Of a DNA stretch of 64,000 nt, positions 5,115 through 43,834 are shown in pieces. Each line of letters begins with the position of its first letter. The first letter of the stretch is position 1. Under the pieces are notes generated by a model. That model saw only the letters and a list, made by a program, of their open reading frames with translations. It searched no databases and was not told where the DNA came from. The position numbers and the translations under genes were made by a program. This DNA is from Pelomyxa schiedti (taxonomy: Eukaryota > Protista > Evosea): the NCBI GenBank assembly GCA_020536535.1, contig JAHLWZ010000199.1:14026-78025 (forward strand), read 5' to 3'.

Positions 5115-7478
5115 TTGCCCGCAGTTGCGAATATTAGAAAAAGGCAAACACAGAAGCAAACACAGAAGCAAACACACCAAGCTCCGTCGTGCGAAACCGA
5201 CATGGAGCGCGAGTTGTCGGGTCTCCCGCCAGACATCCAGGCTCTGCTCATGGCCGCACCGTTCGGCCGAGACGCCCGCGGTGCTCCCCTCGCCACCCAG
5301 CCAAATAGGCCCAGGAGGGGCACCCGCGCGCACCAATCATCATCACCATCATCATCAGCCATCACCGCCGCCCCAACCACAACGACCACGGCCACGAGCT
5401 CCTCCGCCGCGTCGGGTTCATCATCATCATCATCAACTCCTGACCCAGACAACAACACCCCCGCAGCTGCTGCTTCGTCAGCATCATCCTCGTCCTCTTG
5501 TGCCACAACCACAACCACAACCACATCCACAACAAGCGCTTCTTTGGGGTCTCCTTCCCCGTCTGCTCCCCACCGCTCGTCCTCGTCCTCATCGTCGCCG
5601 AGACAACAACTATCCACCAAAACCCGCTCCTTTTCCTCTTCCTCTTCCTTGTCCTCCTCATCCACAGTCATCACCTCTTCCACCCCAAGTGCAGTGACAA
5701 AGAGCCAGCACAAGCCCAAGCCCAATCCCCCAAAACCCAAAAGGGGGAAAGTATCCGGCAAGGTGGAGCCACGCAAACCACTTGTTGCTGTTGGTCTCAC
5801 TCCAACCATCAGCACAATCACGCCTCCTGCTGCTCTTGCTGAAGGTGCACGAGTCGCCGAAACGGTAACGGAAACAAATGTGCCGAGCGTCACATCCTCT
5901 TCTTCAACAAAGCCAGAGGATCCAATTGGAACTCTCACCAACAATGCCTCTGAGGATAAATCCGCCGTTCCGTCTGACACCACAACAGCAGCCTCAGCCG
6001 ATAATAATGGTGCAGAGACAAGAATGACTTCCGCTTCCACAGGAGTGACAACGCTGGTGGGACACGTCACCACCACCAAGGTTCCTTCTGGAAACTTCCA
6101 AGTGACAACAAGCTCCGTGGAACTGCACATTGAGGGAATTTACTTGAGAGAGCAGATGGTGAGCCTCCTCGCGGGAACTCTTCCCAGGTGCGGAAGTGCA
6201 TCTGCCCTGCGATTTCTGACGCCCTCGTTGTTATATTCCGTCTTCATTTGGGCAAGGGCAACCGAGAAGAGGCTGGTCATCGTGCTCCGCACCAGCACCG
6301 GTCAAGGAACTCCTGAAGATCGAGCACTGAAGCTCGGACTCTGGCAGGATGCGGGTGTCATATCCTCGGAATTGGAAGTCAATCCCGTGTGGCGTTCTCC
6401 TGAAGAGCCCTGGTTGGTCACCTTCGCTGGAGAGGATCACTACGTCGTTCACCAGAAGAATGGCCCGGGAACCCCTTCCATTTTCAAGCTTCGCAACGTG
6501 CAAAGACCGGGTGACTCGAGGGTCTTGCTGGTGATCCCCACCCCTCCCCCTCGAGAATTTCACTGCAGAACAAACAGCCACTGGGTCCTTTATCACTATG
6601 GAGCTGAACCAGAATTTTACGTTGAGCCTGCCCTGCTTCCCCCCACACCACCACAAATTGGAAGTGCCTCCTCCTCTGCCTCCTCTTCCTCCTCCCTGTT
6701 GAAAGTTCAACAAGAAGAACTGGGCCTGTTGGAAGGGCACGTGATTTCCCTGGTCACTCTGAGCAAGAGGGAGCCCCACCTGGCGCTCCTTGTTTCCTGT
6801 AAGGTAAACGCGAATTCCACGCAGGCTGAGTGTGACATAATATTCTGGAATGTTAAGAAGTCAGTGGAGAGCAAGCGATTCCACTAGATCGAGAGGTGGC
6901 TGGTGACTGGGATGCAGCCCCGGGAAGGTGAGACCATTTCGAAGCCGTTTGTGATCAGGTCTGGTTCCTCTGATGATGACTGCAACCTGGGCGACGACGC
7001 AGTCGTGGTTGCCAAATCATTGATGGGCAGAGTACACGTCATCAAGAGGAAGAATCCATCAGCACCTCACCTCGTCCAAAGTGCCGGGTCTGAAGCCAGG
7101 AACTTGTTCCCAATTGGGAACGGAACCAAGTTCTGCATCACATACGACGGGAGATATGAAACACGAGACGTGAACATGCCGGAGAACGTGCTGATGACCG
7201 TCGACACCAGGGGGTTCATGTCGGTGCAATGGGAGACAGGCACCGGGCTCATGTTGGCCATGTCAGAAAAGAAGAAGAAGAAGGTGGTGGGGCCCACGGA
7301 GAGTGACGACAACAACAACAACTCGGACACCATCCAGCACATCGACGTGAGGAACATGGAGGACAACAGACCACTCTTCAGGGTGACCCTGATACAACGT
7401 TGGTACGCTGATACCTCCATCGTCAGGTGTTTATCTTTCAGTTCCCCGCACAACAACAACCACCACCACACCCCATAA
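5115..7478 (+). pseudogene. Intronless paralogue of the 817-aa ORF (S/T-rich N-terminus, HPRCG-type module, beta-rich C-terminus), interrupted by an in-frame TAG
   Basis: ORFs 5115-6887 and 6903-7478 are in the same frame. CAC-TAG-ATC at 6882-6890 corresponds to CAC-GAG-ATC (His-Glu-Ile) in the copy at 41381-43834. Confidence 0.75.
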
Positions 7479-7637
7479 CCCCAGAAACCAACAATTTCGC
7501 TTTTCTTTTCAAGAACAAACCTCGACCCATAAGTCTGGACGGAGCGAAATTTCGGTTCAAAAAGTCGGAGAACGGCACCACGAAAATTACGGAAAAACAC
7601 TCATTTCCAAGGCGTAATCACATTTCATTGATTAATC

Positions 7638-7880
7638 TCAAGCGAGCAGGGGGCGAAAGTAGCTCTCCTTGAACCGAAAACCAAAGGATACCCTGTGCGT
7701 GATGGAATAGGCGAATGGGATTCGATGCGCTCTAGTCCCTGACGTTGTCTGATGCCTAGGAGGCCAGATAGCCCACCCGGAGTAGGTCAACGTCGGCTCG
7801 GGCGAGAGCCTTGGTGAGCAAGAGTGGTAAGGATCTCCCAAAAGAACTTGAAGGGGGTGAACACCAGTGGAAATATTCTT
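7638..7880 (-). repeat. Copy 1 of a triplicated ~240-bp degenerate ORF fragment (FTPFKFFWEILTT...GFRFKESYFRPLLA); other copies at about 40060-40300 and 40965-41214
   Basis: The same peptide fragments appear in ORFs 7638-7994, 39895-40151 and 40900-41214, with different frameshifts. Confidence 0.75.
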
Positions 7881-8102
7881 TTTTTTCCCTGCCATCCATC
7901 CACTCGATTTGTCGAGTATTGACACTGTGGGCAGGCAGACGACATACTTCTTTTTCTTGGCCGTTGCCAGCAAAGTTGACACTGGCACACTCACTCACCC
8001 CGGCACCCATTTGAAAATAAAAAAATCAATGTTTTTTTTTCTTTCTTTTTTTCGAAAAAATCAGATTTTACAAGACAAGACAGACTCTTCTTGGGCTGGT
8101 GG

Positions 8103-10581
8103 TCAAGGATTGGATGTGTAGACCCTGACCAAATTGTCCCAGGAGGATGTGAAGAGTGTGTCACCAGAGGGGGGACTCAGAGACACACACGTAAGCCTGT
8201 TGGTGGCACTTGTATCTCGCCATGCCAACCTGCCGGTCAGGACTGACCACCCTATCAGCTCCCCAGAGTCGCAGGTTGAAAACAGACTGTGCCCGCTCGC
8301 TGAGAACGCAACGCTGGTGGTTCCGCACAACACAGATTCGTGTTTGAAAGCCGCGGCGGCGCGTGTCGAACGCCGGTCATACACACGGCAAATTGATTCA
8401 TCTGTGCATTTTGTGTGTGTGATTGTGTGTGTGTGTGGATGGAGAGTTAGTTGACGGCGACGGCGACGGCGACGGTGGTTACGAACGTGCAGAGGGGGGG
8501 GGAGAGGGGGAGAGGGGGAGAGGAGGAGGGGAGGAATTCAGCCACACAAACAACCTCCAGCGGATGCGTATAATGTTCCATTCCCGGAAACGCACACGGA
8601 ATTGATGTCGCAATCTGCATCGGACCACGTGATGACCGGATCTGGGTCCCGTATGTCATAAATTCGCGTTCTGGTATCACATGCTCCACTCACGAATTCA
8701 TTTGGGTTGCTGGGGCTAACGGCCACCGTCATCNNNNNNNNNNNNNNNNNNNNNNNNNNNNNNNNNNNNNNNNNNNNNNNNNNNNNNNNNNNNNNNNNNN
8801 NNNNNNNNNNNNNNNNNNNNNNNNNNNNNNNNNAAAAGAAGTATGTCGTCTGCCTGCCCACAGTGTCAATACTCGACAAATCGAGTGGATGGATGGCAGG
8901 GAAAAAAAAGAATATTTCCACTGGTGTTCACCCCCTTCAAGTTCTTTTGGGAGAGGGGGAGAGGAGGAGGGGAGGGAATTCAGCCACACAAACAACCTCC
9001 AGCGGATGCGTATAATGTTCCATTCCCGGAAACGCACACGGAATTGATGTCGCAATCTGCATCCGACCACGTGATGACCGGATCTGGGTCCCGTATGTCA
9101 TAAATTCGCGTTCTGGTATCACATGCTCCACTCACGAATTCATTTGGGTTGCTGGGGCTAACGGCCACCGTCATCACGTCGCCCTGTGTGTGGAATGGTG
9201 TGTGTTTTTAGACTGGCCACATAGACTTTTTTGGGGTTCCTACATTTGCACCTGTGAATTTAGTGATGGCGGTTCCCGTTTCCACATCCCACAGAATGCA
9301 ACTTAGGTCTCCGGAGCTGCTTAAAAGTCTCTCTGTGGTGTTCATAAATCGCACTGCAGACACATATCCATTGTGCCCATGAAATTCTTTGCACGGGGTA
9401 CTGCTTGCTGTCTTCCAGTCATACAAACTGACCGTGTCTAAAGCAATACACAGTTTGTCCATGGAGAAAGGGGGAAAAAAAAAAGACCAAGGAAAGAAAG
9501 TACTTACTATCAAGCCCACCACATCCAGCATACTTAAGGCATGGGGAAAGAACACTGGACATCATATAACTGGAGCGAAGAGGAATTCCTAAAAGAAGGG
9601 ACAGTTTATGTTTCCTGGAACTCCATTTCTACGTTGATGAGTGCTGTGGGGTTAATGGCACAAAACTAGTAACTCGTACCCATAGTGCCAGTCTCCCATC
9701 TTTTGAGTTGGTGACAATAGTACCGTCGTTGCCTGCATACATATTGTATATGTAACTCGCGTGGTACGTTCCTTGTGCACTCAAGTGCAGAGTATCATAA
9801 CATGGCTGGGGGATACTGGAGAGTGGAGTTGGGGTTGGCGGGGAACTCCCGAAGGTTGGGACAATAATAGACTGCAGTCTTGTAAAAAAGCTAGGTGGTT
9901 GCCGCTTTGGAGTGATCAGTGGGTCTTTATACAGTGGCTCCTTGCTAAGAATGCATAGCTCGCGGCCTGGCGCCCCATTGAAAATAGTGTACACCTATCC
10001 GACAGCAGAATGAATAAAGTAGAATGGAATGGAATGAACAAAAGGGGGTAGTAACTCACAAGTGTTTTCCACCTTTTGCACACCAGACAGCACACAACAG
10101 CAGGTCTCACCCTCAACTCATTTAGAGCCACACCCAGAATACGCAATGACACTTCAGCCCTTGCATCAGTACTTCCAGAAGGATCGGAACTGGAACCGTA
10201 ACCAGAATCAGAACCAGAATCCGCATACAATTCACAGCACTCCCTAGTTGGAGGACTCAAAGAGGTACTAGCATGAAATATGTCCAGGGCCAGTTCGAAA
10301 TAATCAACACTTCGCCCAGTCACAATTGGGTGAGGTTTAGAGGGCGTCGCCGCAGTGGCAGCAGTGCCCGGCTGCGTGGACGGCGACGGCGACGGCGACG
10401 ACGCGGAAGCACCATCACACACCGACGGCGATGATGGGATCCCCAACAGCCTGTCAATTGTCCCCGAAGCACCAAACACAAACCCAAAAACCACCAACAT
10501 GGGCTCGTCGGGCAAACATGCCACGGACATCAAGCCAGGCGCTGGTGCTCCCTTATTACTCCGTCTGGATGACGACGCCAT
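8103..10581 (-). CDS. F-box protein with a G-protein beta-subunit-type 7-bladed WD40 propeller; multi-exon, start may lie at 10694
   Basis: F-box halves LPDEPMLVVFGFV and VCCLVCKRWKTL. A phase-0 intron at 10059-9995 joins this to VYTIFNG...HASYIYNM..TNSKDGRLALW. Then follow Gbeta-diagnostic IPLRSSYMM..CGGLDN, GHNGYVSAVRF..SSSGDLSCILWD, GDVMTVAVS..FVSGACD, DINSV, CGTTSVAFSASG and TSSWDNLVRVY. An assembly gap lies inside the gene. Confidence 0.75.
8734..8833. other. 100-N scaffold gap with duplicated and inverted flanks
   Basis: Run of 100 N. About 8535-8733 is repeated at about 8975-9174, and 8834-8953 is the reverse complement of about 7836-7955. Confidence 0.95.
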
Positions 10582-10866
10582 AACGCCCAACGAATAGCCG
10601 GGGGAAAAAAAAACTACAAAAATGATGCCAAACATCACCTTCCCAGAACCCGGCCTCTGGTTGTCTGATGACGGAATACTATTTTCAAGCAGCATTGACT
10701 CCTCCGTTTGTGAACGTTGTTGGAAGCTCCACAACAAGTTTGGAAGAGAAAGAAAAAATTTTCATTTTTCTTGCTAATATGCACCCAAGTGCTGTGTGCA
10801 ACAAAAGGTTGTTTGGACCTCACATGGCACGAGATAAGAATCCAAAAGTGATTTGGTGGGTTGGTG

Positions 10867-12381
10867 TCATGATGACACTCGTGGCTTTTTTCCTCTTTCT
10901 GCAGACGCCTGCATTTGTTCAGCTTCACGCTTTTTGCGCCTATTTGGTTGTTGTGATGGAGTCAGATGATGGATGATGAGAATGGTGCAGAAAGCAAGCA
11001 AGGAAGGAGAAAAAGAAAAGTGGGAATGCATACACATAATCGGCATAAGTGCTTCCTCCAGTGGGTAGGGAAGATTGCATTAGTGTAACGCGAGTGGAGG
11101 AAGATTCTGTACAATCCCACTTGCTGCCGGCTCTTTGGTGCGTTGTGGTTGTAGTAGTGCTCGATGTGATTGTTGGAAGTTGTTGTTGTGGCAGAGGAAG
11201 GACAGAGGTTGAAGTTGAGGTTGCGGTTTGTACTACAAGAGTGGCTGCGGTTCCTGATTGAAGGGGGATTATGGTTGCCGGTTTACTATTGGGATTGGGG
11301 TCGGAGGTTGGTACATTTTTGATTGTGGAAGGCGGTGGGACGGGAAGTGTTGCAGTACCTGCGGCCTGGAAATCAATTGAAGTACGATTTTTAGCAGCTT
11401 GTTCTCGTGCCCTTTCTGCCTCTGCTTGTTTACTGGCTTTTTTTTTTTGGAAAAAAGGTGAATTTTGTGGAAGCCACTAATGCATTTACAAATGGCATCA
11501 TAGTGATCAGCTTCTTCAAATCTATGTGGATCAAACACTTCCTTTGGGTAGTTTGTACCAATTTGGTCAATTTCATGGTACTCAATGAGTTTATCCAGAA
11601 TTGTTGGGTTGTTGAAATGCTACGATGTCTTGAGTTAAGTCATGCAGATAATTAAGTACCTTGGTGCGTCTTAGGCTCGCACTAAGGCTTGCACCCTGTT
11701 TCTTCTTAAGCCAGAATTTTCTCAATTTTTCCTGCATAGGAAGTTAGTACCCTTGGCTTCAAATGATTATATAAATTGATGGCACTAATATCATACAGAC
11801 AATTCAGGTGAAATTCCACCAAGTGCCTGTGAGGTTGCTTGAGAAGCAGAAGGCGAGTCGATGCTATTTAGTTTTAGTTTTCGTTCATCTCTACTACTCG
11901 GTGTGAAATTTTTATTTAGAATAAGCAGTAATGGCAGGACTTAAACAAAAAAATAAAAATAGTAATGGCGATAATGACAATAACCAACGAACCTCTGTGA
12001 GAGTTCCCCACCGTGCTCTGAATATCCAATTCGTGCCAACGGTGGTGTCGTTCTTTCGTTCGTGAGATTCCCGCGTGGTGATGCACACAGTAACTTTTTC
12101 TCCGACGACGATGGCTTCGACAAACCCACATTTTCTGCTGATGATGCTGTGCGAGTTCCATGTTTGCAGTCGTTCTCGTTCTCGTCCTCCTCGTCGTCGT
12201 CCTGGTCCTCAGTTTCGTCGTCGTCGCGGTCTTGTTCGTTTCTGAATTGAGTCGACGACGGAGGAGCCTGTTGGAGACGCGGCAATGAGCACCCTTCGTG
12301 AGTGTCCTCCATTCGTTGCACATCATTGCCTGCCGCTACATCGTCGTCTTCGTCACCGTACGCGGACACCAAGTTATACAT
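10867..12381 (-). CDS. SAP30BP: SAP30-binding protein (HCNGP family), multi-exon
   Basis: Start MYNLVSAYGDEDDD, acidic tract, then the spliced HCNGP core HFNNPTILDKLIEYHEIDQIGTNYPKEVFDPHRFEEADHYDAI, then NRTSIDF and KWD. Confidence 0.8.
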
Positions 12382-38857: not shown

Positions 38858-39823
38858 TTGGTGGGCTTGATAGTAAGTACTTCCATGGACAAACTGTGTA
38901 TTGCTTTAGACACGGTCAGTTTGTATGACTGGAAGACAGCAAGCAGTACCCCGTGCAAAGAATTTCCTGGGCACAATGGATATGTCTCTCTGCCAGTGCG
39001 ATTTATGAAAACCACAGAGAGACTTTTAAGCAGCTCCGGAGAGACATAAGTTGCATTTTGTGGGATGTGGAAACGGGAACCGGAATCACTAAATAAATAC
39101 ACAGGTGCAAATGTAAGAACAGAACCCGAAAAATGACTGTGTGGCCAGTCTAAAAACACACACCATTCCACACACAGGGTGACGTGATGACGGTGGCCGT
39201 TAGCCCCAGCAACCAAAATGAATTCGTGAGTGGAGCATGTGATACCAGAACGCGAATTTATGACATACGGGACCCAAATCCGGTCATCACGTGGTCCGAC
39301 GCAGATTGTGACATCAATTCCGTGTGCGTTTCCGGGAATGGAACATTATACGCATCCGCTGGAGGTTGTTTGTGTGGCTGAATTCCTCCCCTCCTCCTCT
39401 CCCCCTCTCCCCCTCTCCCCCTCTACCCCTCTGCACGTTCGTAACCATCGTCGTCGTCGCCGTCAACTAACTCTCCATCCACACACACACACACACACAA
39501 TCACACACACACACACAAAATGCACAGATGAATCGATTTGCCGTGTGTATGACCGGCGTTCGACACGCGCCGCGGCGGCTTTCAAACACGAATCTGTGTT
39601 GTGCGGAACCACCAGCGTTGCGTTCTCAGCGAGCGGGCACAGTCTGTTTTCAACCTGTGACTCCGGGGAGCTGATAGGGTGGTCAGTCCTGACCGGCAGA
39701 TTGGCATGGCGAGATACAAGTGCCACCAACAGGCTTACATGTGTGTCTCTGAGTCCCTCTGGTGACACACTCTTCACATCCTCCTGGGACAATTTGGTCA
39801 GGGTCTACACATCCAATCCTTGA
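38858..39823 (+). pseudogene. 5'-truncated, frameshifted copy of the Gbeta-like WD40 exons (no F-box, no first blade)
   Basis: Begins abruptly at GGTGGGCTTGATAGTAAG. Has indels relative to copy A (GTCTCTCTGCCAGTG vs GTGTCTGCAGTG; GGAGAGACATAAG vs GGAGACCTAAG) and an internally deleted intron. The 3' exons remain open. Confidence 0.75.
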
Positions 39824-40419
39824 CCACCAGCCCAAGAAGAGTCGTCTGTCTTGTCTTGTAAAATCTGATTTTTTGAAAAAAAGAAAAAAAAACATTGATT
39901 TTTATTTTCAAATGGGTGAGTGAGTGTGCCAGTGTCAACTTTGCTGGCAACTGCCAAGAAAGAGAAGCATGTCGTCTGCCTGCCCACAGTGTTCAATACT
40001 CGACAAATCGAGTGGATGGATGGCAGGGAAAAAAAAGAATATTTCAACTGATGTTCACCCCCTTCAAGTTCTTTTGGGAGATCCTTACCACTCTTCCAGA
40101 CCAAGGCTCTCGCCCGAGCCGACGTTGACCTACTCCGGGTGGGCCTTCTGACCTCCTAGGCATCGGACAACGTCAGGGACTAGAGCGCATCGAATCCCAT
40201 TCGCCTATTCCATCACGCACAAGGTATCCTTTGGTTATTCTTTCCCCTGTGTGGGTGGTTTTCGGTTCAAGGAGAGCTACTTTCGCCCCCTGCTCGCTTG
40301 AGATTAATTTAATCAATGAAATGTGATTACGCCTTGGAAATGAGTGTTTTTGCGTAATTTTCGTGGTGCCGTTCTCCGATGTTTTCGACCGAAATTTCGC
40401 TCCGTGCAGACTTATGGGT

Positions 40420-40900
40420 CGAGGTTTTGTTCTTGAAAAGAAAGAGAAACACCTGACGATGGAGGTATCAGCGCACCAACGTTGTATCAACTTCAGTCTG
40501 AAGAGTGGTCTGTTGTCCTCCACGTTCCTCACGTCGATGTGCTGGATGGTGTCCGAGTGGTTGTTGCTGTTGTCCAATCTTGCCCTCAAAATGGTCTCAC
40601 CTCCCAGTCCCGAATATTATTTGATGCTCTGTCGGTGAGATAGTCGGCTTCATCTTACAGGAAACGAGGAGCGCGTTCTGCTCCCTATTGCTCAGAGCGA
40701 CCAAAGGAATTATGTGTCCTTCCAACAGGCCCAGCTCTTCTTGTTTAACTTTCAATAGGGAGGACAAGGAGGAGGCATTCCGATTTGTGGTGGTGTGGGG
40801 GGAAGCAGGGCAGTCTCAATGTAAAATTCTGGTTCACCCCCACAGTAATAACAGAGCCTGTGGCTGTTTATCCCACAGTGAAATACTCGAGGGGGAGGCT
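40420..40900 (-). pseudogene. Third, deleted and degenerate fragment of the 817-aa gene family
   Basis: Pieces DTIQHIDVRNVEDNRPLFRLKLIQRW and PPRVFHCGINSHRLCYYCGGEPEFYIETALLPPTPPQIG are separated by deletions. Confidence 0.7.
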
Positions 40901-41380
40901 TGTTCACTCCAGCAAGACCCTCTACCAACCAGGATAAGAAAATGGGAAAAAAAATGTTGCTGGGGTTCACTCCCTTCAAATTCTTTTGGGAGATCCTTAC
41001 CACTCTTGCTCACCAAGGCTTTTCAGACGAGCTGACATTGACCTACTCCGGGTGGACCCTATGGCCTCCTAGGCATCAGTCAAGGTCAGGGACTAGAGCG
41101 CATCGAATCCCATTCGCCTATTCCATCACGCACAAGGTGTCCTTTGGTTATTCTTTCCCTTGTGTGGGTGGTTTTCGGTTCAAGGAGAGCTACTTTCGCC
41201 CCCTGCTCGCTTGAGATTTAATCAATTGAATGTGATCATGTCTTGGAAAGGAGTGTTTTGTACGTGTTTTGCTTGTTTTCTCCGGGTTTTTTGGAAGGGA
41301 AATTCTGGGCTGCCAAGACTTATGGGTCCAGGTTTTTGAAAGAAAGAATTTCCAAAGTACTTTTTGTTTGGCTTATGGGG

Positions 41381-43834
41381 TTATGGGGTGTTGTTGCTGT
41401 GAGGGGAACTGAACGAAAAACACTGGAAGAAGCCGGTGTCGGCGTACCAACGTTGTATCAGGGTCACCCTGAAGAGTGATCTGTTGTCCTCCACGTTCCT
41501 CACGTCGATGTGCTGGATGGTGTCCGAGTCTTTGTTTTTGTTTTTGTCGGCACTCACTGTGTGGTCCCCCACCACCTTCTTCTTCTTTTCCGACAGGGCC
41601 AACATGAGGCCAGTGTTTGTCTCCCATTGCACCGACATGAACCCTGTGGTGTCGACAGTCATCAGCACGTCCTCTGGTGTGTTCGCGTCTCGTAACTCAT
41701 ATCTTCCGTCATATGTGACACAGAACTTGGTTCCGTTCCCAATTGGGAACAAGTTCCTGACCTCAGACGCGGCACTTTGGACGAGGTGAGGTGCTGATGG
41801 ATTCTTCCTCTTGATGACGTGTACTCTCCCCATCGATGATTTGGCAACCACGACTGCGTCGTCGCCCAGGTTGCAGTTGCAGTCATCATCAGAGGAACCA
41901 GACCTGATCACAAACGCCTTCGAAATAGTCTCACCTTCCCGGACTTGCATCCCAGTCACCGACCACCTCTCGATCTCGTGGAATCGCTTGCTCTCCACAG
42001 ACTTCTTGATGTTCCAGAATATTATGTGATACTCAGCCTGCGTGCCATCGGCGTTCGCCTTACGGGAAACGAGGAGCGCCAGGTGGGGCTCCCTCTTGCT
42101 CAGAGCAACCAAGGAAATCACGTGCCCTTCCGACAGGCCCAGTTCTTCTTGTTGAATTTTCAACAGGGAGGACAAGAAAGAGGCACTTCCAATTTGTGGT
42201 GTTGGAAGCAGAGCAGGCGCAACGTAAAATTCTGGTCCAGTTCCATAGTGATAAAGGACCCAGTGGCTGTTTGTCTTGCAGTGAAATACTCGAGGGGGAG
42301 GGGTGGGGATCACCAGCAAGACCCTCGAGTCACCCGGTCTTTGCACGTTGCGAAGCTTGAAAATGGAAGGGGTTCCCGGGCCATTCTTCTGGTGAACGAC
42401 GTAGTGATCCTCTCCAGCGAAGGTGACCAACCAGGGCTCTTCAGGAGAACGCCACACGGGATTGACTTCCAATTCCGAGGATATGACACCCGCATCCTGC
42501 CAGAGTCCGAGCTTCAGTGCTCGATCTTCAGGAGTTCCTTGACCGGTGCTGGTGCGGAGCACGATGACCAGCCTCTTCTCGGTTGCCCTTGCCCAAATGA
42601 AGACGGAATATAACAACGAGGGCGTCAGAAATCGCAGGGCAGATGCACTTCCGCACCTGGGAAGAGTTCCCACAAGGAGGTTCAGCATCTGCTCTCTCAA
42701 GTAAATTCCCTCAATGTGCGTTTCCACGGAGCTTGTCACTTGGAAGTTTCCAGAAGGAACCTTGGTGGTGGTGGCGGTTGTTGTGACGTGCCCCACCAGC
42801 GTTGCCACTCCTGTGGAAGCGGAAGTCATTCTTGTCTCTGCACCATTATTATCGGCTGAGGCTGCTGTTTTGGTGTCAGGAATCCCGGATTTATGTTCGG
42901 CGTTGTTGGTGAGGCTTTCTTGAGTTCCAACTGGATCCTCTGACTGTGTTGAAGAAGAGGAGGTGACGCTCGGCACATTTGTTTCCGTTACCGTTTCAGC
43001 GACTCGTGCACCTTCAGCAAGAGCAACAGCAGGTGTGATTGTGCTGATGGTTGGAGTGAGACCGTCAACAACAGCAACAAGTGGTTTGCGTGGCTCTGCC
43101 TCTGCAGATACTTTCCCCTTTTTGGGTTTTGGGGGATTTGGCTGCTTCACGGTGGGCTTGCGCTGGCTCTTTGTCACTGCACTTGGGGTGGAAGAGGTGA
43201 TGACTGTGGATGAGGAGGACGAGGAAGAGGAAGAAGAAGAGGAAGAGGAGCGGGTTTTGGTGGATAGTTGTTGTCTCGGCGACGATGAGGACGAGGACGA
43301 GCGGGGGGGAGCAGACGGGGAAGGAGACCCCAAAGAAGCGCTTGCTGTGGATGTGGTTGTGGATGTGGCACAAGAGGATGAGGATGATGCTGACGAAGCA
43401 GCAGCAGCGGGGGTGTTGTTGGCTGGGTCAGGAGTTGATGATGATGATGACGATGAACCCGACGCGGCGGAGGTGGTCGTTGTCGTTGAGGCGGCGGTGA
43501 TGGCTGATGCTGATGATGATGATGATGATTGGTGCGCGCGGGTGCCCCTCCTTGGCCTCTTTGGCTGGGTGGCGAGGGGAGCACCGCGGGCGTCTCGGCC
43601 GAACGGTGCGGCCCTGAGCAGAGCCTGGATGTCTGGCGGGAGACCCGACAACTCGCGCTCCATGTCGGTTTCGCACGACGGAGCTTGGTGCGTGGAGGAG
43701 GTGGAGAGGGAGCTGCTCGTTTTGTTCCCCTGCATGTCGACGATAACGAGCGAGGTAAGTTTACCGCACCTGCTTCTTTCTTCCTTTTTCTTCTCCCTCC
43801 TTTGGTTTTTGTTGCCTTTTTCTAATACTCGCAA
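41381..43834 (-). CDS. Intronless ~790-817-aa hypothetical protein: S/T-rich N-terminus, HPRCG-type module, beta-rich C-terminal region; true ATG probably MQGNK or MERE
   Basis: Uninterrupted ORF that reads through the position of the TAG in its paralogue at 5115-7478. Confidence 0.75.
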   Translation of the reverse strand: MRVLEKGNKNQRREKKKEERSRCGKLTSLVIVDMQGNKTSSSLSTSSTHQAPSCETDMERELSGLPPDIQALLRAAPFGRDARGAPLATQPKRPRRGTRAHQSSSSSSASAITAASTTTTTSAASGSSSSSSSTPDPANNTPAAAASSASSSSSCATSTTTSTASASLGSPSPSAPPRSSSSSSSPRQQLSTKTRSSSSSSSSSSSSSSTVITSSTPSAVTKSQRKPTVKQPNPPKPKKGKVSAEAEPRKPLVAVVDGLTPTISTITPAVALAEGARVAETVTETNVPSVTSSSSTQSEDPVGTQESLTNNAEHKSGIPDTKTAASADNNGAETRMTSASTGVATLVGHVTTTATTTKVPSGNFQVTSSVETHIEGIYLREQMLNLLVGTLPRCGSASALRFLTPSLLYSVFIWARATEKRLVIVLRTSTGQGTPEDRALKLGLWQDAGVISSELEVNPVWRSPEEPWLVTFAGEDHYVVHQKNGPGTPSIFKLRNVQRPGDSRVLLVIPTPPPRVFHCKTNSHWVLYHYGTGPEFYVAPALLPTPQIGSASFLSSLLKIQQEELGLSEGHVISLVALSKREPHLALLVSRKANADGTQAEYHIIFWNIKKSVESKRFHEIERWSVTGMQVREGETISKAFVIRSGSSDDDCNCNLGDDAVVVAKSSMGRVHVIKRKNPSAPHLVQSAASEVRNLFPIGNGTKFCVTYDGRYELRDANTPEDVLMTVDTTGFMSVQWETNTGLMLALSEKKKKVVGDHTVSADKNKNKDSDTIQHIDVRNVEDNRSLFRVTLIQRWYADTGFFQCFSFSSPHSNNTP

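What the first reader, a model, noticed from the sequence alone, without database searches (positions are those of the whole stretch)
8103..10581. F-box fused to a heterotrimeric G-protein beta-type propeller
Seen: an F-box (LPDEPMLVVFGFV...VCCLVCKRWKTL) splices in phase 0 (GTGAGT at 10059, AG at 9996-9995) into seven WD blades. These carry Gbeta-specific strings (IPLRSS, CGGLDN, SSSGD.SC.LWD, FVSGACD, CG.TSV.FS.SG, SWD) rather than generic WD40 motifs. Established: canonical Gbeta has an N-terminal coiled coil for Ggamma, and F-boxes bind Skp1 in SCF ligases. The Gbeta1 W99-equivalent is Tyr (SSYMM) and the W332-equivalent is kept (SSWD). Inference: a Gbeta paralogue repurposed as an SCF substrate receptor that could ubiquitinate Galpha or Gbeta-binding effectors. 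I know no described protein of this architecture.
Basis: partly seen in the sequence, partly recalled or inferred. Interest (0 to 1): 0.82.

Follow-up and report, generated by a model that had tools for sequence, protein, structure and literature searches.

The report
Split F-box fused to Gbeta propeller
An anaerobic amoeba (Pelomyxa schiedti) has a small gene family in which a true G-protein beta-subunit propeller has lost its G-gamma-binding helix and instead carries an F-box, the handle of SCF ubiquitin ligases, which points to a direct but untested link between G-protein signalling and protein degradation.

Summary
A six-exon minus-strand gene (10581-8103, 545 aa) is identical to a GenBank Pelomyxa schiedti protein annotated only as "G protein beta subunit".

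- **Gap:** it lies inside intron 5. Its flanks are assembly duplicates, and two RNA contigs join exon 5 to exon 6 in frame.
- **Propeller:** it is Gbeta family. Pfam WD40_Gbeta scores 199 bits (cut-off 150). It is 35% identical to Gbeta1 over residues 54-339, against 16% to beta-TrCP. It keeps 11 of 13 invariant Galpha-contact residues; K57 and W99 are Tyr. The Ggamma coiled-coil helix is absent.
- **F-box:** it is real but split. Helix 1 (LPDEPMLVVFGF) and helices 2-3 (…VCKRWKTL) are separated by a 120-residue coding insert. Intact sequence gives only sub-threshold hits. With the insert removed in silico, both Pfam F-box models pass their cut-offs.
- **Paralogues:** four other P. schiedti genes share the split F-box, the propeller and all five intron positions.
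- **Distribution:** no relative with this architecture was found elsewhere.
- **Exon 1-2 junction:** it has no RNA coverage and rests on comparative evidence.
- **Function:** an SCF-receptor role is inferred, not shown.

Verdict: a new variant of a known kind.

The parts
10477..10515 (-). F-box helix 1, residues 23-35 (LPDEPMLVVFGFV)
   Evidence: The LP[DE][ED] motif plus hydrophobic helix is conserved at the N-terminus of all five paralogues. It adds about 14 bits to the Pfam F-box scores when joined to helices 2-3.
10117..10476 (-). 120-codon Ser/Pro/Thr/Ala-rich insert inside the F-box (between helix 1 and helix 2), with a conserved (V/I)DY motif
   Evidence: It is open only in the coding frame: 0 stops against 3 and 11 in the other frames, and the same holds in three paralogues checked. 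dN/dS is 0.29-0.46 against paralogues. AlphaFold pLDDT is below 50.
10060..10116 (-). F-box helices 2-3, residues 156-174 (LRVRPAVVCCLVCKRWKTL), at the end of exon 1
   Evidence: Pfam F-box-like E 0.014, matching profile positions 16-34. All paralogues match at the same place with E 0.003-0.01.
10060..10581 (-). Exon 1 (ATG at 10581-10579; residues 1-174)
   Evidence: Identical to the N-terminus of P0221. dN/dS 0.34-0.38. No RNA coverage.
9995..10059 (-). Intron 1 (65 nt, GTGAGT..AG, phase 0)
   Evidence: Paralogues P0003, P0220 and P0026 have an intron at the same position and phase. Not covered by RNA.
9680..9994 (-). Exon 2: Pro-rich linker (residues 175-250) and the start of the propeller
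   Evidence: There is no in-frame ATG before residue 259 and a stop lies just upstream of the acceptor. An RNA contig covers it up to 9872.
9629..9679 (-). Intron 2 (51 nt, GTACGA..TAG, phase 0, holds an in-frame TAG)
   Evidence: Homologous introns occur in the paralogues. It is retained in RNA contig X1 record 2, which is spliced at introns 3-5.
9508..9628 (-). Exon 3 (IPLRSSYMM ... CGGLD)
   Evidence: The junction 9508|9437 is seen in RNA.
9244..9437 (-). Exon 4
   Evidence: Best Pfam hit is WD40_Gbeta, positions 122-183. Both junctions are seen in RNA.
8997..9183 (-). Exon 5
   Evidence: Best Pfam hit is WD40_Gbeta, positions 185-242. The junction 8997|8401 is seen in two RNA contigs.
8402..8996 (-). 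Intron 5 as assembled. It contains the gap (8734-8833), a duplicate of exon 5 (8555-8733) and an inverted copy of 7834-7954 (8834-8954). The true intron is probably about 153 nt.
   Evidence: Paralogues have a 47-57 nt phase-1 intron here.
8103..8401 (-). Exon 6 with TGA stop (8105-8103)
   Evidence: WD40_Gbeta positions 248-339 of 340. Gbeta1-5 are the best solved relatives. Covered by RNA.

Best explanation
This is an expressed Pelomyxa schiedti gene, one of at least five paralogues. It encodes an F-box protein whose substrate-binding domain is a paralogue of the heterotrimeric G-protein beta subunit.

What the sequence and the searches show:
- The seven-blade propeller is Gbeta family and is collinear with Gbeta1 residues 54-340.
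- It keeps most residues of the top-face surface that Gbeta uses to hold Galpha switch II and effectors.
- The N-terminal helix that pairs with Ggamma is gone.
- In its place is an F-box split in the loop between helix 1 and helix 2 by a 70-120-residue, largely disordered but translated insert. A Pro-rich linker follows.

What is inferred:
- The F-box binds Skp1 and brings the propeller into an SCF (Skp1-Cul1-Rbx1) ligase.
- The propeller then presents a protein that normally docks on the Gbeta top face for ubiquitination. The likeliest candidates are a GDP-bound Galpha or another Gbeta-binding partner.
- The subgroup P0026/P0151 keeps all 13 invariant contact residues and is the best candidate for Galpha binding.
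- The window's subgroup has K57Y and W99Y and has probably shifted its target.
For: - **Gene model:** it equals P0221, and RNA supports introns 3-5.
- **Gbeta family by sequence:** Pfam WD40_Gbeta scores 199.4 bits against a cut-off of 150, covering profile positions 54-339 of 340; the paralogues score 184-221 bits. Gbeta1 matches at E 4.5e-57, query 252-541 to Gbeta1 54-339.
- **Gbeta family by structure:** the top 50 Foldseek PDB matches are all Gbeta chains, with rmsd about 1.5 A and 34-35% identity. VIA-align gives Z 47.5 and 35% identity to Gbeta1, against 21% to RACK1 and 16% to beta-TrCP1.
- **Tree:** the five Pelomyxa proteins form one clade (99/96), joined with all Gbeta and Gbeta5 sequences against generic WD40 proteins (100/100).
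- **Contact residues:**
- **F-box:** every paralogue gives a sub-threshold hit at helices 2-3. Insert-excised composites reach F-box-like 31.1 and 31.3 bits (cut-off 24.3) and F-box 26.1 and 29.3 bits (cut-off 20.5). The only PDB sequences these composites hit are F-boxes (FBXO42, FBXO3, Skp2), aligned without gaps. The nearest clusters by protein language-model features are F-box/WD families, scores 0.93-0.95.
- **Fusion of exon 1 to the propeller:** the same six-exon structure and a phase-0 intron 1 occur in paralogues that are 31-34% identical. Exon 1 and the linker are under purifying selection, dN/dS 0.29-0.46. The insert is open only in frame 0. The linker has no ATG and a stop lies just upstream.
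- **Precedent:** Gbeta proteins act as substrate receptors of a cullin ligase (DDB1-CUL4A) that targets GRK2 (PMC4849471).
Against: - No RNA covers exon 1 or its junction.
- The intact sequence does not reach either Pfam F-box threshold. The composite test used junctions that I chose.
- AlphaFold gave low confidence for the whole N-terminus (pLDDT 30-59). It did not produce an F-box fold for P0026 residues 1-140 (pTM 0.25).
- The linker is Pro-rich and not predicted as the rigid helical linker known (from background knowledge) in Cdc4, FBXW7 and beta-TrCP.
- K57 and W99, both important in Galpha and effector binding, are Tyr in this copy.
- Whether P. schiedti has Galpha, Ggamma, a canonical Gbeta or Skp1 was not checked.
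- The family was found in one species only.
Confidence: 0.55

Rival explanations
1. It is a divergent Gbeta-like scaffold. The N-terminal extension only resembles an F-box and does not recruit Skp1. The protein acts as a Ggamma-independent Gbeta, or as a generic propeller adaptor, with no ligase role.
For: The intact N-terminus stays below both Pfam F-box cut-offs. The 120-residue insert interrupts the domain. AlphaFold does not fold it as an F-box. GenBank and the precomputed Pfam lists carry no F-box for any paralogue.
Against: Both halves of the F-box are the best-conserved parts of exon 1 across paralogues only 31-34% identical. They fall in exact F-box register, pass both thresholds when joined, and hit only F-boxes in the PDB. 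The helices 2-3 region has dN/dS 0.10-0.42.
Confidence: 0.2
2. The F-box binds Skp1, but not to build a ligase. Skp1 serves as the obligate stabilising partner that replaces Ggamma, as in known non-SCF F-box/Skp1 complexes. This would give a Galpha / F-box-Gbeta / Skp1 signalling complex.
For: The Ggamma-binding helix is precisely the part that the F-box replaces. The Galpha-contact surface is fully kept in P0026 and P0151. Non-SCF Skp1/F-box complexes are established (background knowledge, not tested here).
Against: There is no positive evidence. Most F-box/WD40 proteins are SCF receptors. Gbeta already has a documented cullin-ligase receptor role (PMC4849471).
Confidence: 0.15
3. It is a gene-model artefact. 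Exon 1 belongs to a separate small gene or is non-coding, and the real product is an N-terminally shorter Gbeta-like protein.
For: There is no RNA coverage of 9873-10775. All paralogue models come from the same automatic annotation. The assembly is from amplified single cells and holds chimeric duplications right next to this gene.
Against: - Exon 2 has 84 conserved in-frame codons upstream of its first ATG, and a stop at the acceptor.
- The exon-1 ORF ends exactly at a consensus donor in the matching phase in all the loci checked.
- Without splicing, exon 1 runs out of frame into exon 2.
- Exon 1 evolves as coding sequence.
Confidence: 0.06

Closest known systems
Heterotrimeric G-protein beta subunits (Gbeta1-4, Gbeta5, Ste4; Pfam PF25391 WD40_Gbeta)
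   Same: The seven-blade propeller is collinear with Gbeta1 residues 54-340 and 35% identical to it. It scores above the family's curated cut-off. It ends like Gbeta (SWD..(I/V)(W/Y)) and keeps 11 of 13 invariant Galpha-contact residues, or 13 of 13 in paralogues P0026 and P0151.
   Different: It lacks the N-terminal helix that forms the coiled coil with Ggamma. It carries an F-box and a Pro-rich linker instead. It sits on a long branch, and its position inside or beside canonical Gbeta is unresolved. K57 and W99 are Tyr in this copy.
FBXW-type SCF substrate receptors (Cdc4, FBXW7, beta-TrCP, FBXW9, Dictyostelium FbxA)
   Same: An N-terminal F-box is followed by a seven-blade (Cdc4 and FBXW7: eight-blade) WD40 propeller. 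The nearest clusters by protein language-model features are of this kind.
   Different: The propeller is not of the FBXW kind: 16% identity to beta-TrCP1 against 35% to Gbeta1. The F-box is interrupted by a long insert. No dimerisation domain or helical linker was detected (low confidence).
Gbeta as a DDB1-CUL4A substrate receptor for GRK2 (PMC4849471)
   Same: A Gbeta propeller serves as the substrate-recognition subunit of a cullin-RING ligase.
   Different: There the canonical Gbeta docks non-covalently on DDB1 (CRL4). Here the adaptor-binding module (an F-box, for Skp1/CUL1) would be part of the same polypeptide, and Ggamma binding is lost. The function here is untested.
TBL1/TBLR1 ('transducin beta-like', with an F-box-like domain plus WD40)
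   Same: By name and layout: an F-box-like motif N-terminal to 'transducin-like' WD repeats, with links to ubiquitin-dependent turnover (background knowledge, not tested here).
   Different: In those proteins 'transducin-like' means WD40 repeats in general. I could not fetch their sequences to test Gbeta-family membership. They also carry a LisH domain, which is absent here.

Membership tests
Gbeta family (Pfam PF25391 WD40_Gbeta) | Whole-protein score above the curated gathering cut-off (150 bits) | tested here: met
   P0221 scores 199.4 bits. The paralogues score 184, 187.5, 213.2 and 221. No other propeller-specific Pfam family reaches its own cut-off.
Gbeta family (Pfam PF25391 WD40_Gbeta) | Seven blades collinear with Gbeta1, and closer to Gbeta than to other WD40 propellers | tested here: met
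   Query 252-541 aligns to Gbeta1 54-339 at E 4.5e-57. All of the top 50 PDB fold matches are Gbeta chains. Z is 47.5 at 35% identity, against 13-25% identity for the other natural propellers and 28% for yeast Ste4. The tree gives 100/100 with Gbeta against generic WD40.
Gbeta family (Pfam PF25391 WD40_Gbeta) | N-terminal alpha-helix forming the coiled coil with Ggamma | tested here: not met
   Profile positions 1-53 and Gbeta1 residues 1-53 are unmatched in all five paralogues. The region holds the F-box, the insert and a Pro-rich linker.
Gbeta family (Pfam PF25391 WD40_Gbeta) | Conserved Galpha switch-II and effector contact residues on the top face | tested here: inconclusive
   P0221 keeps Y59, M101, L117, N119, Y145, D186, M188, D228, N230, D246 and W332, but has K57Y and W99Y. 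P0026 and P0151 keep all of them. Binding itself cannot be tested here.
F-box (Pfam PF00646 / PF12937) | A contiguous domain scoring above the gathering cut-off | tested here: not met
   The intact exon 1 scores 15.6 and 13.4 bits against cut-offs of 24.3 and 20.5, and only helices 2-3 are matched. The paralogues behave the same way.
F-box (Pfam PF00646 / PF12937) | All three helices in register (LPxE helix 1, a hydrophobic helix 2, V-C-K-R-W in helix 3) once the insert is allowed for | tested here: met
   Insert-excised composites score 31.1-31.3 bits (F-box-like) and 26.1-29.3 bits (F-box), covering profile positions 2-36. They align without gaps to the Skp2, FBXO3 and FBXO42 F-boxes. Both halves are conserved in five paralogues. 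Caveat: I chose the junctions.
F-box (Pfam PF00646 / PF12937) | Binds Skp1 | not testable with these tools
   No multimer prediction was available. Monomer models of the N-terminus have low confidence.
FBXW-type SCF receptors (Cdc4/FBXW7/beta-TrCP) | A propeller homologous to FBXW propellers, with a rigid helical linker after the F-box | tested here: not met
   Identity to beta-TrCP1 is 16% at Z 36.5, ranked 45th and below many unrelated WD40 proteins. The linker at residues 179-250 is Pro-rich with pLDDT below 60.

The most novel reading that the evidence does not exclude
Pelomyxa has rewired the heterotrimeric G-protein core. The Gbeta propeller no longer pairs with Ggamma. Through a built-in F-box it pairs with Skp1. 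This would give one of two things:
- an SCF ligase that reads the nucleotide state of Galpha and degrades it (GDP-Galpha as degron); or
- a new Galpha / F-box-Gbeta / Skp1 signalling trimer.

The 70-120-residue insert inside the F-box, with its conserved (V/I)DY motif and Ser/Asp-rich stretch, would act as a regulatory switch for Skp1 binding.
Probability: 0.15. Interest if true: 0.8.

Novelty: new variant of a known kind. Interest (0 to 1): 0.6.

Why it matters
F-box/WD40 receptors and Gbeta subunits are both textbook proteins. However, I found no described case in which a true Gbeta-family propeller is built into an F-box protein (literature searches; none described such a fusion).

If the F-box is functional, this is a natural, hard-wired version of a link seen only indirectly in animals. 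There, Gbeta acts as a CRL4 receptor (PMC4849471), and Gbeta-gamma is a CRL3-KCTD5 substrate (PMC11047111).

It would give a simple system for asking:
- how a Gbeta fold can exist without Ggamma;
- how the Galpha-binding surface can be reused for substrate selection;
- whether an F-box can tolerate a large insert in its first loop.

It also corrects the public annotation, where five proteins are filed as ordinary G-protein beta subunits.

Tried and rejected
1. **Stop-codon reassignment.** I considered it as an explanation for the in-frame TAG in the retained 51-nt stretch (9629-9679). I rejected it because the paralogues have an intron at the same place with GT..AG ends, so it is intron retention.
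2. **The insert as an unannotated in-frame intron.** A GT after FGF and an AG before LRVRP exist. This is unlikely: the insert is open only in frame 0 in four paralogues, and dN/dS is below 0.5. It is not excluded, because no RNA covers it.
3. **A contiguous degenerate F-box at residues 143-176.** Pfam aligns it, but it scores no better than helices 2-3 alone. The N-terminal helix 1 adds about 14 bits.
4. **Word-index search with P0026 residues 1-135.** It found only the query itself. This says nothing about the family's distribution.
5. **AlphaFold of the full protein and of P0026 residues 1-140.** The N-terminus came out at low confidence, so I ran no fold search on the second model.
6. **AlphaFold DB cluster search.** It returned only generic WD40 proteins.
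7. **Metagenome scan with the family alignment.** All 80 loci kept are canonical Gbeta genes with coiled-coil N-termini. None of them holds the F-box word.
8. **Named FBXW7, Cdc4 or RACK1 sequences for the tree.** I could not fetch them. I used structure-based identities instead.
Full report
**What is there**

On the minus strand between 10581 and 8103 there is a six-exon gene. The exons are 10581-10060, 9994-9680, 9628-9508, 9437-9244, 9183-8997 and 8401-8103, with a TGA stop. The first four introns are 65, 51, 70 and 60 nt. The 545-residue product is identical to database protein P0221.

Related proteins in the same collection carry GenBank names of the type [quoted passage not shown]. Their loci come from assembly GCA_020536535.1. 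The sequencing runs that hold the stretch are single-cell libraries filed as a protist metagenome. Earlier notes of this scan that called the genome amoeba-like, with a methanogen link, pointed me to Pelomyxa, and the protein names confirmed it.

**The gap**

The 100 N at 8734-8833 lie inside intron 5 as assembled (8402-8996). Both flanks are copies of nearby sequence:
- 8528-8733 repeats 8970-9175 at 99%. That stretch covers most of exon 5 and the start of the intron.
- 8834-8954 is a perfect inverted copy of 7834-7954.

Two RNA contigs run from 8997 straight to 8401. A second, partial copy of the gene in this window has exon 5, a 163-nt intron and exon 6 without interruption. The paralogues have a 47-57 nt phase-1 intron at the same position.

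The gap and the duplicate are therefore scaffolding artefacts of an amplified single-cell assembly and do not affect the frame. The true intron is probably about 153 nt.

**RNA evidence**

One 1059-nt RNA contig covers 8112-9872 with introns 3, 4 and 5 removed exactly as modelled. It ends in a Nextera adapter at 9872. It keeps the 51-nt intron 2, which holds an in-frame TAG. The paralogues have a GT..AG intron at the same place, so I read this as intron retention.

**The propeller is a Gbeta**

- Each of exons 4, 5 and 6 alone has Pfam WD40_Gbeta as its best family, in collinear positions.
- The whole protein scores 199.4 bits against a curated cut-off of 150, covering profile positions 54-339 of 340.
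- Against solved structures the best 60 sequence matches are all Gbeta1 (E 4.5e-57, query 252-541 to Gbeta1 54-339).
- The AlphaFold model has pLDDT above 90 for residues 240-545. Its top 50 Foldseek matches in the PDB are all Gbeta chains, with rmsd about 1.5 A.
- In a search of one chain per PDB cluster, Gbeta1 leads with Z 47.5 and 35% identity. Yeast Ste4 has 28% identity, RACK1 21%, WDR5 17% and beta-TrCP1 16%.
- In a maximum-likelihood tree the five Pelomyxa proteins form one clade (99/96). They join all Gbeta and Gbeta5 sequences against generic WD40 proteins (100/100). Whether they sit inside or beside canonical Gbeta is unresolved (67/67).

**Contact residues**

From the alignment to Gbeta1 and a 36-sequence alignment:
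- The window protein keeps Y59, M101, L117, N119, Y145, D186, M188, D228, N230, D246 and W332.
- It has Tyr at K57 and at W99, as do its two closest paralogues.
- Paralogues P0026 and P0151 keep all thirteen positions that are near-invariant in canonical Gbeta.

That these residues contact Galpha switch II and effectors is established knowledge, not tested here. The N-terminal helix that pairs with Ggamma has no counterpart.

**The F-box**

The intact exon 1 gives only sub-threshold hits: F-box-like E 0.014 at 15.6 bits, and F-box at 13.4 bits. These are limited to helices 2-3 (residues 156-174). The same weak hit recurs at the same place in every paralogue.

Helix 1 lies 120 residues upstream (LPDEPMLVVFGF). 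In the other subgroup the corresponding motif, LPEDVVHLILSMV, sits at the very N-terminus.

When the insert is removed in silico, the composites of P0026 and P0221 reach 31.1 and 31.3 bits for F-box-like (cut-off 24.3). They reach 26.1 and 29.3 bits for F-box (cut-off 20.5), over profile positions 2-36. In the whole PDB they hit only F-boxes (FBXO42, FBXO3, Skp2), aligned without gaps. I chose the junctions, so this is supportive rather than independent proof.

Protein language-model features put P0026 next to F-box/WD families at 0.93-0.95. That is a lead, not a test. AlphaFold could not fold the N-terminus with confidence.

**The insert is translated**

- It has no stop in frame 0, but 3 and 11 stops in the other frames. 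Three paralogues checked show the same pattern.
- dN/dS against paralogues is 0.29-0.46.
- It holds a (V/I)DY motif conserved in both subgroups.

**Is exon 1 part of the gene?**

- Five P. schiedti genes (P0221, P0220, P0003, P0026, P0151) share the split F-box, the linker and the propeller. Four of them are confirmed to share all five intron positions and phases, although the two subgroups are only 31-34% identical.
- Exon 2 carries 84 conserved in-frame codons before its first ATG, and there is a stop right at the acceptor. It therefore needs an upstream coding exon.
- The exon-1 ORF ends at a consensus donor in the matching phase.
- I put the fusion at about 0.9.

**Distribution**

- A full HMMER scan of 1.84 billion representatives with exon 6 found only P. 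schiedti proteins below E 1e-30.
- Word-index searches with P0026 and P0003 found the paralogues and then ordinary Gbeta and Gbeta5 proteins of 340-370 residues.
- A metagenome scan gave 80 canonical Gbeta genes with coiled-coil N-termini and none with the F-box word.
- Literature searches found no description of such a fusion.

**Mechanism**

Shown: the architecture, family membership of the propeller, loss of the Ggamma helix, conservation of the top face, and purifying selection on all parts.

Inferred: Skp1 binding, SCF assembly, and presentation of a Gbeta-surface ligand (Galpha-GDP or another partner) for ubiquitination.

A precedent is the DDB1-CUL4A ligase, which uses Gbeta as its receptor for GRK2 (PMC4849471).

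Rival readings are a non-functional F-box remnant, Skp1 acting as a Ggamma surrogate without a cullin, and a gene-model artefact.

**Verdict**

This is a new variant of a known kind, so far specific to one amoeba, and of moderate to high interest.

Noticed in passing
window 38860-39830 (+), within 38882-42853: A truncated, broken second copy of the gene runs from the end of exon 3 to the 3' flank. It lies inside an inverted segmental duplication of at least 3.9 kb (6000-9465 against 42853-38882, 88-94% identity). Its exon 4 has indels that give a frameshift and stops, while exons 5-6 are intact. GenBank model P0001 (290 aa, 'G protein beta subunit') is built on it. No F-box exon lies upstream.
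   Followed up: partly
L002:2014-3829 and L002:4001-5775: Two paralogues, P0220 and P0003 (84% identical), lie in tandem on another contig, next to a 2424-residue LRR-Roc-COR-kinase gene.
   Followed up: partly
L002:3923-4000: The GenBank start of P0003 is 26 codons too short. An upstream in-frame ATG gives MASSDRRRNKGAARAVTSVTCLPDEP..., which restores the LPDE start of F-box helix 1.
   Followed up: yes
window 9629-9679 (-): The 51-nt intron 2, which holds an in-frame TAG, is retained in an RNA contig that is correctly spliced at introns 3, 4 and 5.
   Followed up: partly
window 8834-8954 and 7834-7954: A perfect 121-nt inverted copy of the gene's 3' flank abuts the assembly gap. Inverted chimeras of this kind are typical of multiple-displacement amplification of single cells.
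   Followed up: partly
window about 10270-10290 (-), residues 101-106; P0026 residues 72-76: A (V/I)DY motif inside the otherwise unconserved F-box insert is invariant in all five paralogues. The window's subgroup also has a Ser/Asp/Gly-rich stretch (DSGSDSGYGSSSDPSGSTD) that looks like a phosphorylation cluster.
   Followed up: no
window 7875 (+) and 10776-10900: An RNA contig ends in a poly(A) run at 7875 on the + strand. This is probably the 3' end of the convergent + strand gene at 5115-7478. Other RNA contigs cover 10776-10900, upstream of the start codon, and I could not assign them to a gene.
   Followed up: no
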